A stretch of 64,000 bases of DNA from positions 33,425-97,424 of the forward strand of contig JAWQFM010000025.1 in NCBI GenBank assembly GCA_033442325.1, in the 5' to 3' direction. Below are positions 57,290 to 60,645 of the stretch, one piece after another. The translations under genes were made by a program, and so were the position numbers. Every line of letters begins with the position of its first letter. The stretch's first letter is position 1. Origin of the DNA: Salpingoeca rosetta. Taxonomy: Eukaryota; Protista; Choanoflagellata. The notes under the pieces are model-generated. The model made no database searches. It worked only from the letters and a program-made list of their open reading frames with translations, and was not told where the DNA came from.

Positions 57290-57940
57290 ATGGCTGCTGT
57301 GTTGTATGCCGTGGTTGCCGAGGGCGCCCGCCCTCTGGCAGAACACTGTGAGCCTGGCACAGTGGATGCGGCGTCGCTTGTGCCGTCCGCGTTGGACCAG
57401 CTGCAACGTCTGCCACGAAACCAATCCCAAGGCTCAGTGGTGCTCGAGCAGGACGGTGTCCCAAGGTGCTGGGGCTGGTTTCTCATGTGAAGAGAAGGGA
57501 AGGAGTGCAGGATTCCAGGGAGCGAACCACGCGCAACTCATGCATTCTAAACGCGCCTGCAATGTCTGGTTGTGTGTGGCCATGCGTATTCCTTGTGTCC
57601 GATCTCTCCAACCTTGCGCGACTGATCTCCAGCTACCATGCATGCGTCATGTCTCTCCTCGCTCTCAGGTACAAGAAGAAGCACCTTTTCTTTCTTCGTC
57701 AGGACAACTTCACGTTTGCGTGTGTCACAGAGCGAGGCTTTGGTAGGTGCAGATGCTGCGAGAGGAGACAAGCGCTGCTCTTGGATTCCTGCGCGAAAGC
57801 TAGAGGGCTGCCTTCGTATTCTCTCGTTGTGTTTGTTGTTGTGCTTGTGGCACATGTTGTGCATTGCTTGGTGTACTATCCCTTGCTTCTCGTAGTAAGG
57901 TAGAAGCAGGCACACGAGCGCGCGCCGCACACACACACAC

Positions 57941-58004
<64 letters not shown>

Positions 58005-59369
58005 GCGCGCGCATTCACACACACACACACACACACAAATCTTCTTTGGCCAGGACAAGCCCGTGCCATGCAGTTTCTGGGCGAAGTGGCAGCGGAGTTT
58101 GAACCGTTCAAGCAGGCCGCGCGCCGTTACAACAACTACGAGTTGGACGACCGTTTCGCCAGAATCATCGCGGGACTCATTGTGAGCGTTATGACCGTGT
58201 CTTTCTTGCTTTGACTCTCTTGCGCTCACATCCGGGGCATGTGCAATCCCACATCCAAAGCTTATCGTCTTTCACATGGATTGGAATCGTTTCAACGACT
58301 CATGCGGTAGCCGCGAGCCCCGACCAACGACCCAGAACTCCTACAAGCCCAGCAAGAAGTCTCAGCAGCAACAGGCGTCATGCGCGACACTCTGCGTGCG
58401 TAGCCACGTGCTTTATTGCTTGTGGGAGTGTTGTGGTTGTGTCGGTGTCCGTGTTTGTTGGTGTATATGTACGTGCCCCTCTGCGTGTGTACATGTGTAC
58501 ATGTGTGCATGTGTACATGCGCGTACGTGCCTGTTTGGACCCAAACGCGCATGCTTGCTTGCCATCAGAACCAAGGCAACACCTCTCCTGAGCAACTTCT
58601 GCTGCTGTTTTGCTTTCACTCACACTTCTGCTGCTGTTTTGCTTTGACTCACACTGCTGCTGCTGCTTCTTCTTCTTCTTCTTCTTCTTGTCACTTGCAG
58701 AGAAGGTGGTTCAAAGAGATGAACTCCTGGAAGACTTACAAGGGCGATCAGAGGACATCTCAGGTACTCAGATCCATGTTGGTGCATTAGTGCTTCTGCC
58801 GATTCACGCAAGTTTCTAGCGTGTGTACACCACACCTGCAACATCCGGCGTGCTCACAGCCCGCCATCGTGGTACGTACTGACAATTCCGCACGTGTGGT
58901 GGATGTGATTCCGTTGTCTGCGTAGCTGACAGTGCTCGGTTCCAAACCAGATCAACCAAATTGAGGCGGAGGGCCGCTTGGTCCGCGTACAAGTACTACC
59001 TGATCCCCGTTGTTGTAATTGTTGTCCTTGCAGGGATCATCGCACTGTCCATCTGCTCCAAGCCGGGGAAGTGCACGCGCTCGCGTTCATCGCTGAAGCA
59101 GTGCAGTGACATTCCGGCACAGAAGTGCAACCCATCCTTGCAGGTGTTTGGGCACAAGGCCTGCGGAGACGACAGCAAGGTGATATGCGGGCCTAGCGCG
59201 TCAACTGTAAACCAGTTCTTCTCCCGCGACGGCAAGAAGTGCAACGCCGCCAATTCGCGCCTGACCAAGTGCTACGTCAAGCGCGCGGCCGAGCTCGACG
59301 CACTGTTCCCAGACAATGAGGTGGCATGCAAACACGTGCCATCGTACGCTTGTGTGTGCGCGCGCGCGC

Positions 59370-59430
<61 letters not shown>

Positions 59431-60645
59431 CTTGTGTTGGGGATGTCTCCCACGAAAATGACTGTAAGCCGCCTGCTATCTGCTCCTGAATCTACCCAAC
59501 TCACATGTTGTTGGCTTCTTGCGCTGACGCTTCTTCTTTGGCAGTTTTCACACACAAACTGCACGGACACCTGTACCAACGTTCTTCTGCGTCAAGCAAC
59601 ACGACTCCACGACAGCAAAGGTTCGCTCGTGGTGATGCGTGTGCATATGTTGACTTGTTGTGTGTCTGTGTGTCTGTGTGTCTGTGTCTGTGTGTCGTGT
59701 GTCCGTGTGTCCGTGTGTCTGTGTGTCTGTGTGTGTAAAGTGCTTTCACGTGGAGTCTCCGTCTCCCTGCGCTGCTCTCGACGCTGCGCCTAGCATGTTC
59801 GCCAACCTTGCTGCTTTGACGATTCGTGTTCACGACACCAGAAACCCCTCGCACCCTGTGGTTCGTAAACTGCATGTTTTGCAGCCTGTGAGCTGAGCAA
59901 GGACGCGAGCTTGCAGGCACTTTTCCTCCGCGACGCTCGCGCACAAACGCTGTGCCAGCGGTCGCATCATGTGTACTGTGGAGATCTTCTCTATGACACC
60001 ATTCTGCCTTTGCGTGAAACAACCCCGACGAAACACAACTGCTCAACCATTTCGCGTGGTGGCACGTGCTTTGCTCATGTTCAGGTACACCCATTTGGGC
60101 GCCGCAAGTTTCAAGCAGGGAGAGAGAGAGTGTGTGTGTGTGTGTGAGAGAGAGTGTGTGTGAGTGTGTGAGTGAGAGTGAGAGAGAGGGAGAGAGAGGG
60201 AGAGAGAGGGAGAGAGTGAGTGTGTGTGTGTGAGTTTGGATGCAAGATAGTCTCCCCTCTAGTGTGCTCCCTTGTGTTCACACAAACACAATAATCCGAC
60301 AATTCGACATCTTGCACTCTTTTCAGGAGCGCTGGGACGATCTCAAGCTGAACGTCACACTTACAGCGGAATTCTTTGCCTCCATCAACAACACTTGCAC
60401 ATCTTTTGGAATCACGCTGCAAACTTCGAGTACGCTGCGATTGTTGCACCCGACACGTGCAATATGCGATAACATGTGTTGTTGCTTGCAAAGCACGAAA
60501 CACTGCGCTCATTCCCTCGCACACACACTCGCGCACACAAACGTTTCGCGCCTTCCTTCTCGGCGTTGCAGGCTCATTCTTGTCGGCTGCATCTGCTGTG
60601 ACCGTGATTGTCATGGCACTGACAAGCATTCTCCTCACTCACTGA
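57290..60645 (+). CDS. VAMP7: VAMP7-like longin R-SNARE with a ~239-aa Cys-rich post-TM extension and hydrophobic C-terminus
   Basis: Phase-consistent exons 57290-57465, 57669-57742, 58054-58181, 58311-58395, 58701-58763, 58926-59320, 59545-59620, 59885-60084, 60327-60429, 60572-60645. Longin-like VLYAVVAEGARPLAEH...FTFACVT...ARAMQFL. SNARE motif QQEVSAATGVMRDTLQKVVQRDELLEDLQGRSEDI...F..RSTKLRR. TM YYLIPVVVIVVLAGIIALSI. Confidence 0.8.

What the first reader, a model, noticed from the sequence alone, without database searches (positions are those of the whole stretch)
57290..60645. VAMP7-like SNARE with a large Cys-rich luminal domain and GPI-like tail (double-anchor topology)
Seen: after longin, R-SNARE motif (zero-layer Arg in KVVQRDE) and TM, the same exon stays open for 89 more codons. 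Four further phase-compatible exons add 150 aa, giving ~239 aa with 16 Cys, four N-glycosylation sequons (NCT, NCS, NVT, NNT) and the end TSSSFLSAASAVTVIVMALTSILLTH*. Established: R-SNAREs are tail-anchored with only a few luminal residues; small residues followed by a terminal hydrophobic stretch is the GPI-signal pattern; a TM plus C-terminal GPI topology is rare (tetherin/BST-2). Inference: a receptor-like SNARE coupling luminal or extracellular recognition to membrane fusion, or a SNARE that carries its own surface cargo.
Basis: partly seen in the sequence, partly recalled or inferred. Interest (0 to 1): 0.8.

Follow-up and report, generated by a model that had tools for sequence, protein, structure and literature searches.

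The report
Choanoflagellate VAMP7-like SNARE with luminal domain
A Salpingoeca rosetta gene, already annotated only as a hypothetical protein, encodes a VAMP7-type membrane-fusion protein that continues past its membrane anchor into a 237-residue cysteine-rich domain with no detected relatives; this is unusual for a SNARE, but I have no direct RNA proof.

Summary
I rebuilt ten GT/AG exons (57290-60645, + strand). They give a 457-aa protein that is letter-for-letter the public model PTSG_09110 / XP_004989363.1 / UniProt F2UMR5 of Salpingoeca rosetta, named only "hypothetical protein".

- **SNARE part.** Residues 1-220 are a longin plus R-SNARE plus transmembrane unit. Pfam Synaptobrevin scores E 8.6e-20, the best solved relative is VAMP7 (E 1e-11), and the zero-layer Arg is R160.
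- **Continuation.** The exon that encodes the membrane helix stays open for 87 more codons. Four further exons bring the luminal part to 237 aa, with 15 Cys (16 counting C219), four N-glycosylation sequons and a GPI-signal-like hydrophobic end.
- **Coding signal.** Codon usage in the luminal part matches the SNARE part (0.17 vs 0.18 bits per codon; introns at most 0.03). There is no in-frame Met before residue 448, so these exons cannot be a separate gene started from an ATG within them.
- **Relatives.** No relative of the luminal domain turned up in any search run, and its fold is unknown.
- **Weak points.** The read-laying run was lost to a filter, so RNA support is indirect. GPI anchoring, orthologues and a separate canonical VAMP7 were not tested.

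Verdict: a real, already annotated gene with an undescribed variant architecture; its function is inferred only. This scan also noted the same stretch a second time (s1-438805).

The parts
57290..58181 (+). Exons 1-3 (57290-57465, 57669-57742, 58054-58181): longin domain, residues 1-126
   Evidence: VAMP7 longin structures align to residues 3-126 (2dmw and 2vx8, E 1e-4). Full-length VAMP7 4b93 aligns to residues 3-191, E 1e-11. Pfam Longin scores 25.9 bits against a cut-off of 26.2. The Atlas model matches longin clusters (TM 0.85 by the matched row).
58311..58763 (+). Exons 4 and 5 (58311-58395, 58701-58763): first two thirds of the R-SNARE motif. The zero-layer Arg R160 is at 58715-58717.
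   Evidence: Pfam Synaptobrevin covers residues 135-219, E 8.6e-20. In the alignments to VAMP2 and VAMP7, R160 falls in the conserved Arg column.
58926..59320 (+). Exon 6: end of the SNARE motif (to about 58984), TM helix residues 201-220 (59000-59059), then 87 luminal codons (59060-59320) in the same open frame
   Evidence: Translation. Pfam Synaptobrevin hits this exon alone, E 2.6e-7. The used frame has 0 stops against 7 and 4 in the other frames. GC3 is 0.76.
59545..59620 (+). Exon 7: luminal, 2 Cys, sequon NCT
   Evidence: It forms part of the public model P0001.
59885..60084 (+). Exon 8: luminal, 5 Cys, sequon NCS
   Evidence: The used frame has 0 stops; the other frames have 1 and 3.
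60327..60429 (+). Exon 9: luminal, 1 Cys, sequons NVT and NNT. The Ser run holding the candidate omega site (S433) starts at 60426.
60572..60645 (+). Exon 10: C-terminal hydrophobic stretch (residues 437-455, Kyte-Doolittle mean 2.22), two final residues (TH) and the stop codon at 60643-60645. It is either a GPI-signal-like tail or a second TM.
   Evidence: (hydropathy).

Best explanation
This is one gene of the choanoflagellate Salpingoeca rosetta (PTSG_09110). It encodes a type II membrane protein.

The cytosolic N-terminal 200 residues are a VAMP7-type longin domain plus an R-SNARE motif. A single TM helix follows directly, as in every synaptobrevin. The chain then continues on the luminal or extracellular side as a 237-residue Cys-rich domain that probably carries disulfides and N-glycans. 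It ends in a hydrophobic tail.

Shown here: the architecture, its identity to the public model, the VAMP7-like nature of the N-terminal half, and the absence of detectable relatives for the C-terminal half.

Inferred from established knowledge:
- A TM helix 237 residues from the C-terminus cannot use the post-translational tail-anchor (GET/TRC40) route. It must act as a co-translational signal-anchor, which places the Cys-rich part in the ER lumen.
- The cytosolic half would then pair with Q-SNAREs in endosomal or exocytic fusion, like VAMP7. After fusion with the plasma membrane the Cys-rich domain would sit on the cell surface.
- The tail is slightly more likely a GPI-attachment signal (about 55:45) than a second TM. 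Processing would give a TM-plus-GPI double anchor.

What the luminal domain binds or does is unknown.
For: My model is identical to P0001 = PTSG_09110 / XP_004989363.1 / F2UMR5. The window DNA is identical to GCA_000188695.1 GL832983.1.

SNARE half: Pfam Synaptobrevin 135-219, E 8.6e-20. VAMP7 4b93 aligns to residues 3-191, E 1e-11, and the zero-layer Arg aligns. Atlas features score 0.95 to longin/synaptobrevin clusters of 214-223 aa.

One gene: the TM and the first 87 luminal codons lie in one exon and one frame. The luminal part has no in-frame Met before residue 448, so it has no start or signal peptide of its own. No other gene is called between 60645 and 61375.

Coding signal: the codon-usage log-odds is 0.168 bits per codon for the luminal part and 0.142 for exons 7-10 alone, against 0.182 for the SNARE part. 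Its off-frames score -0.34 and -0.17, the introns at most 0.03, and open stretches in the introns and flanks average -0.01, SD 0.07. GC3 is 0.66 against 0.63. All tandem repeats fall in introns or flanks and none in exons.

Compartment signature: 15 Cys in 237 luminal residues against 2 in 200 cytosolic residues; 4 sequons.

Indirect RNA support: the public gene set was refined with RNA-seq and 98% of its models have transcript support (PMC4054682). Three contig sets of about 32 Mb each (a size expected for a transcriptome) hold 0.29-0.37 of the stretch's words. A fully spliced mRNA would give 0.34, and exons 1-6 alone only 0.23.

Engineered VAMP7-pHluorin carries a luminal tag, about 240 aa by my recollection of GFP's size, and still reports exocytosis (PMC9974462). 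A luminal load of this size is therefore compatible with VAMP7 traffic.
Against: No read or junction evidence was obtained for this gene.

The runs with 0.29-0.37 word share are only guessed to be RNA, so low-coverage DNA could give the same shares.

The luminal domain occurs in no other protein found. There is therefore no cross-species conservation to prove it is under selection.

Long spurious open frames are common in this GC-rich genome, and the codon model was trained on only 21 ORFs from the window.

AF2 gave pLDDT 36, so nothing shows that the domain folds.

Positive charges flank the TM about equally on both sides. Orientation therefore rests on the large N-terminal domain, not on the positive-inside rule.

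GT dinucleotides just after the TM could, if used, give a canonical short tail.
Confidence: 0.68

Rival explanations
1. The gene model is over-extended. The protein actually made would be a canonical tail-anchored VAMP7-like SNARE of about 225-260 aa, produced from an alternative donor just after the TM or by early termination. The Cys-rich exons would then be untranslated or an artefact of the gene finder.
For: SNAREs of this class are 214-223 aa everywhere else. Candidate GT sites at 59071-59146, joined to the model's own acceptors, would give tails of 5-37 residues. There is no read-level evidence for the junctions. The luminal part has no relatives. Long chance ORFs are frequent in this genome.
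Against: The luminal exons carry a codon-usage signal equal to that of the SNARE exons and above every open stretch in the introns. Exon 6 has 0 stops in frame against 7 and 4 out of frame. The chain ends in a hydrophobic tail followed by a stop, a feature that gene finders do not select for. The RNA-seq-refined public model uses the long form. Word shares of 0.29-0.37 exceed the 0.16-0.23 expected from a short form.
Confidence: 0.15
2. The protein is as modelled, but the C-terminal hydrophobic stretch is a second transmembrane helix and not a GPI signal. That would give a hairpin with a large luminal loop and both ends cytosolic.
For: Residues 437-455 form a 19-residue stretch with a Kyte-Doolittle mean of 2.22, long enough to span a bilayer. 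No GPI predictor could be run.
Against: Only two residues (TH) follow the stretch and there is no basic cytosolic stop-transfer flank. Its moderate hydrophobicity, with Ser/Thr inside and a run of small residues (SSS, then SAAS) 7-10 residues upstream, is the usual GPI-signal layout. This was judged by eye, against established knowledge of omega-site rules.
Confidence: 0.3
3. This is a young, possibly neutral read-through fusion. A VAMP7 paralogue lost its stop and acquired downstream sequence. The extension would be translated but have no function of its own, and the SNARE may be decaying.
For: The domain is an orphan confined to one species as far as searched. The SNARE half is rather divergent from VAMP7 (E 1e-11 only, Longin just under the Pfam cut-off). 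The locus lies among fast-evolving TPR receptor genes.
Against: De novo sequence rarely shows all of the following together: Cys enriched about sevenfold over the cytosolic half, four sequons, a terminal hydrophobic signal, normal codon usage and four cleanly spliced exons. The SNARE layers and the zero-layer Arg are intact.
Confidence: 0.12

Closest known systems
VAMP7 / TI-VAMP (longin R-SNARE, endosomal, lysosomal and exocytic fusion)
   Same: An N-terminal longin domain, an R-SNARE motif with the zero-layer Arg, and a TM helix directly after the motif. It is the best solved-structure match over residues 3-191.
   Different: VAMP7 is tail-anchored, with a luminal tail of about 14 residues (own knowledge). 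Related clusters are 214-223 aa. This protein has 237 residues after the helix. Sequence similarity is modest, and orthology to VAMP7 rather than a paralogue was not tested.
VAMP7-pHluorin / synaptopHluorin (engineered reporters)
   Same: The topology is the same: an R-SNARE with a luminal domain of about 240 residues fused after the TM. These reporters still traffic and report exocytosis (PMC9974462; tag size and luminal position from my own knowledge).
   Different: They are artificial, with a GFP beta-barrel and no Cys-rich glycoprotein domain or second anchor. Here the arrangement is encoded naturally.
Tetherin / BST-2 (type II TM plus C-terminal GPI anchor)
   Same: The proposed double-anchor topology: a cytosolic N-terminus, one TM, an ectodomain with Cys and N-glycans, and a C-terminal GPI-type signal (own knowledge of tetherin).
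   Different: There is no sequence relation, and tetherin has a short cytosolic tail and a coiled-coil ectodomain. GPI attachment is unproven here.
Yeast Sec20p (a Q-SNARE-like ER protein with a luminal C-terminal domain ending in HDEL)
   Same: It is a precedent for a SNARE-family protein that is type II with a sizeable luminal portion rather than strictly tail-anchored. This is from my own knowledge and was not checked here.
   Different: It belongs to a different SNARE class, has no longin domain, and its luminal part is shorter, carries an ER-retrieval signal and is not Cys-rich.

Membership tests
Synaptobrevin / R-SNARE (PF00957) | Profile match above the curated cut-off | tested here: met
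   70.8 bits against a cut-off of 26.4, E 8.6e-20, profile positions 4-88 of 89.
Synaptobrevin / R-SNARE (PF00957) | Arg at the zero layer of the heptad register | tested here: met
   R160 in VVQRDE aligns with the Arg of VLERDQ (VAMP2) and VAQRGE (VAMP7).
Synaptobrevin / R-SNARE (PF00957) | TM helix immediately after the SNARE motif | tested here: met
   Residues 201-220, Kyte-Doolittle mean 3.06. The region is covered by the Pfam match.
Tail-anchored proteins | Single TM within roughly 30-40 residues of the C-terminus | tested here: not met
   In the model, 237 residues follow the helix. With intron 6 retained, 133 residues would follow it.
Longin domain (PF13774) / longin SNAREs | N-terminal longin fold of about 120 residues | tested here: met
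   Pfam scores 25.9 bits, just under the 26.2 cut-off. VAMP7 longin structures align to residues 3-126 at E 1e-4, and full-length VAMP7 aligns at E 1e-11. The Atlas model matches a longin cluster at TM 0.85 by the matched row.
VAMP7 subfamily (orthology) | Groups with VAMP7 rather than Sec22, Ykt6 or a lineage-specific paralogue in a tree, with no other VAMP7 in the genome | not tested
Only the ranking of solved structures (VAMP7 first) is available.
GPI-anchored proteins | C-terminal signal: a small omega residue with a small omega+2, a polar spacer, and a hydrophobic stretch running to the C-terminus | tested here: inconclusive
   The pattern is present by inspection: S433-S-S, spacer FLSAASA, a 13-residue hydrophobic stretch and then TH. 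No GPI predictor is available, and a second TM is not excluded.
GPI-anchored proteins | Entry of the C-terminus into the ER lumen | not testable with these tools
   Inferred from the type II signal-anchor topology. There is no cleavable signal peptide.
Known Cys-rich extracellular domains (any Pfam family, e.g. folate-receptor, GDNF/GAS1 or Frizzled CRD types, considered because they are Cys-rich and, for the first two, GPI-anchored) | Profile or fold match | tested here: not met
   No Pfam family matches residues 221-457 at E up to 1. Atlas feature hits are at most 0.82 and structure TM at most 0.36. The AF2 model is too poor to search with.

The most novel reading that the evidence does not exclude
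This would be a natural SNARE that is not tail-anchored and is doubly anchored by a TM and a GPI. Its own luminal Cys-rich glycoprotein domain would be delivered to the choanoflagellate cell surface by the fusion event that the same molecule catalyses. Surface display, adhesion or prey and partner recognition would thereby be tied directly to VAMP7-type exocytosis.
Probability: 0.25. Interest if true: 0.75.

Novelty: new variant of a known kind. Interest (0 to 1): 0.5.

Why it matters
SNAREs are the textbook tail-anchored proteins, and longin R-SNAREs are about 220 aa across eukaryotes. A natural family member with a full-size luminal or extracellular domain would have three consequences:

- It would have to use the SRP/Sec61 insertion route rather than GET.
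- It would test how much luminal load a fusion-competent TM tolerates. So far this has been explored only with engineered pHluorin fusions.
- It would link a fusion protein physically to a surface module in the closest living relatives of animals.

S. rosetta is genetically tractable, so the question is directly testable. If the extension turns out to be a species-specific accident, the finding is only an annotation curiosity.

Tried and rejected
**Read laying.** No splice junction could be checked. I worked beside them and masked them in the one local tblastn database.

**Searches for relatives of the luminal domain**
- Word search with exon 6 (131 aa): nothing in the 72-229 aa range.
- HMMER of exon 6 against 1.84 billion representatives: only the protein itself.
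- Word searches with residues 221-457, in the 251-800 aa and 130-415 aa length ranges: only itself, or nothing.
- Metagenome contig scan: nothing.

**Other analyses of the luminal domain**
- Pfam on the luminal part: nothing.
- AF2 on the luminal part without an alignment gave pLDDT 36, so no fold search was run.
- Atlas look-alikes of the luminal part scored at most 0.82 (chytrid hypothetical proteins, DUF7729, DUF1397). These are leads only and I did not pursue them.
- Internal duplication of the luminal domain: none, z 0.8.
- Paralogues elsewhere in the window: none.

**Literature.** PTSG_09110 appears in no searched main text, nor in the stored supplements of two S. rosetta papers; a third held no supplement text. 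I found no paper describing a longin R-SNARE with a natural luminal domain. The choanoflagellate secretory-vesicle paper does not mention VAMP7.

**Independent gene.** I rejected the idea that the Cys-rich exons form an independent gene, because that frame has no Met and no signal peptide of its own.
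Full report
**What is there**

The stretch 57290-60645 on the + strand contains ten exons. All introns begin with GT and end with AG, and the phases fit. The spliced CDS is 1374 nt and encodes 457 residues.

A HMMER search of the translated sixth exon against 1.84 billion representative proteins returned a single hit, P0001, also 457 aa. 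P0001 is letter-for-letter identical to my model. It is the public protein PTSG_09110 / XP_004989363.1 / UniProt F2UMR5 of Salpingoeca rosetta, named only "hypothetical protein" or "V-SNARE coiled-coil homology domain-containing protein". The window DNA is identical to assembly GCA_000188695.1, record GL832983.1. Earlier notes of this scan had already named the genome as S. rosetta, and this look-up confirms it.

**The SNARE half**

- Pfam finds Synaptobrevin at residues 135-219 (70.8 bits, E 8.6e-20).
- Pfam finds Longin at residues 63-118, just under its cut-off (25.9 against 26.2 bits).
- Among solved structures the best match is VAMP7 (4b93), aligned over residues 3-191 at E 1e-11. VAMP2, VAMP4 and VAMP8 follow on the SNARE motif, and VAMP7 longin-domain structures match residues 3-126.
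- In those alignments R160 (58715-58717) falls in the zero-layer Arg column.
- The language-model and structure look-ups of residues 1-225 give only longin/synaptobrevin clusters of 214-223 aa.
- The TM helix is residues 201-220 (59000-59059), the most hydrophobic 19-residue window of the protein.

**The continuation**

Exon 6 (58926-59320) encodes the end of the SNARE motif, the TM helix and 87 further codons without a break. In that exon the used frame has no stop, while the other two frames have 7 and 4. Any transcript that contains the whole of exon 6 therefore gives a SNARE with a long luminal extension. Even with intron 6 retained, 133 residues would follow the helix.

Exons 7-10 add 150 residues. 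The luminal part (221-457) has:
- 15 Cys, plus C219 at the edge of the helix, against 2 Cys in the 200 cytosolic residues;
- four N-X-S/T sequons;
- a second hydrophobic stretch at residues 437-455, followed only by Thr-His and the stop.

A run of small residues (S433-S-S, then SAAS) precedes that stretch by 7-10 residues. This is the usual layout of a GPI-attachment signal. No GPI predictor was available, so a second TM helix remains a live alternative.

**Is the extension coding, and is it part of this gene?**

1. I trained a codon-usage log-odds model on 21 non-overlapping long ORFs from the window.
   - The luminal part scores 0.168 bits per codon, and exons 7-10 alone score 0.142.
   - The SNARE part scores 0.182.
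   - The luminal off-frames score -0.34 and -0.17.
   - All nine introns score at most 0.03 in any frame.
   - The 85 open stretches of at least 25 codons in the introns and flanks average -0.01 (SD 0.07, maximum 0.153).
2. GC3 is 0.66 in the luminal part against 0.63 in the SNARE part.
3. Every tandem repeat in 58600-61300 lies in an intron or flank, and none lies in an exon.
4. The luminal frame has no Met before residue 448. These exons therefore have no start codon or signal peptide of their own. The only hydrophobic segment that could take them into the ER is the SNARE's TM.
5. No other gene is called between the stop and the next gene, which starts about 730 bp downstream.

A caution applies. 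Long open frames in wrong frames are common in this GC-rich genome, so ORF length alone means little, and the training set is small.

**RNA evidence is indirect only**

Two indirect points remain:
- The genome paper states that the gene set was refined with RNA-seq from eight conditions and that 98% of genes have transcript support (PMC4054682).
- The run index lists three contig sets of about 32 Mb each, a size expected for a transcriptome, from one study. They hold 0.29-0.37 of the stretch's sampled words. A fully spliced ten-exon mRNA would hold 0.34, exons 1-6 alone 0.23, and a short tail-anchored form 0.16.

The run index only guesses that those runs are RNA, so this is suggestive and no more.

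**The luminal domain is an orphan**

- No Pfam family matches.
- The word-index search finds nothing at either length range, 251-800 aa or 130-415 aa.
- HMMER with the first 87 luminal residues, part of the exon 6 query, finds nothing.
- A metagenome scan finds nothing.
- There is no paralogue in the window and no internal duplication.
- AF2 without an alignment gave pLDDT 36, so I ran no fold search.
- Atlas look-alikes (chytrid hypothetical proteins of 236-259 aa, DUF7729, DUF1397) scored at most 0.82, which the tool says shuffled sequences reach a third of the time.

**How it most likely works**

Shown: the domain order is longin, R-SNARE, TM, Cys-rich domain, hydrophobic tail.

Inferred from established cell biology:
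- A TM helix this far from the C-terminus cannot be inserted by the tail-anchor pathway. It must act as a signal-anchor during translation.
- The large N-terminal domain stays cytosolic, giving a type II orientation. Charges flank the helix equally, so the positive-inside rule does not decide the orientation.
- The Cys-rich part then enters the ER lumen, where disulfides and N-glycans would form.
- If the tail is a GPI signal, the transamidase would replace it, giving a TM-plus-GPI double anchor as in tetherin.
- The cytosolic half would pair with Q-SNAREs as VAMP7 does. After fusion with the plasma membrane the Cys-rich domain would face outward.
- Engineered VAMP7-pHluorin carries a luminal tag, about 240 residues by my recollection of GFP's size, and still reports exocytosis (PMC9974462). 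A luminal load of this size therefore does not by itself block trafficking.
- The function of the luminal domain (adhesion, recognition, or none) is open.

**Comparison with what is known, and novelty**

The protein meets the defining features of an R-SNARE and of a longin SNARE. It fails the tail-anchor criterion that holds for nearly all SNAREs. In the library searched I found no paper describing a natural longin R-SNARE with a large luminal domain, and no paper mentions PTSG_09110. All longin-SNARE clusters returned are about 220 aa.

The gene is therefore already annotated but uncharacterised, and its architecture is a new variant of a known kind. Because only one species carries it as far as I could see, a young and possibly neutral read-through fusion cannot be excluded. 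Another note of this scan reports a different S. rosetta gene that joins an R-SNARE motif to a seven-helix protein. I did not examine that gene.

**Verdict**

- Observation: confirmed.
- Interpretation: partly supported. The architecture holds, but GPI anchoring and a receptor function are untested.
- Confidence that the 457-aa protein is the real product: about 0.7.
- Interest: 0.5.

Noticed in passing
window 55513-56817 (+): The upstream neighbour is a single-exon ORF of about 434 aa with an N-terminal hydrophobic segment. It holds roughly eight repeats built around the motif S-V-L-I-I-D-P-x-T-N-T-x-D. The public gene call has no Pfam family on record.
   Followed up: no
window 56840-56980: A long (GTTGT)n microsatellite lies in the intergenic region just upstream of the SNARE gene.
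   Followed up: no
window 57930-58040, 59358-59429, 59659-59736, 60120-60235, 60516-60539, 60723-60760: Five of the gene's introns and its 3' flank carry a microsatellite (CA/GT, GC, GTGTCT, GAGT types), while the exons are free of them.
   Followed up: partly
window 52437-54764 (-) and 61375 onward (+): The SNARE gene lies between TPR-rich genes: one of 703 aa on the - strand, two genes upstream, and one of 824 aa on the + strand immediately downstream. Other notes of this scan read them as TIR/HET-like TPR receptors.
   Followed up: no
window 10039-10206, 27707-28630, 34719-34818, 48168-48267: There are four assembly gaps (runs of N) in the window.
   Followed up: no
whole window: Many overlapping open frames of more than 220 codons occur in different frames and strands of the same loci, for example around 34650-37220. 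ORF length is therefore weak evidence of coding in this genome.
   Followed up: partly
The tool says its filter also trips by chance. I sent them to no search tool afterwards.
   Followed up: no
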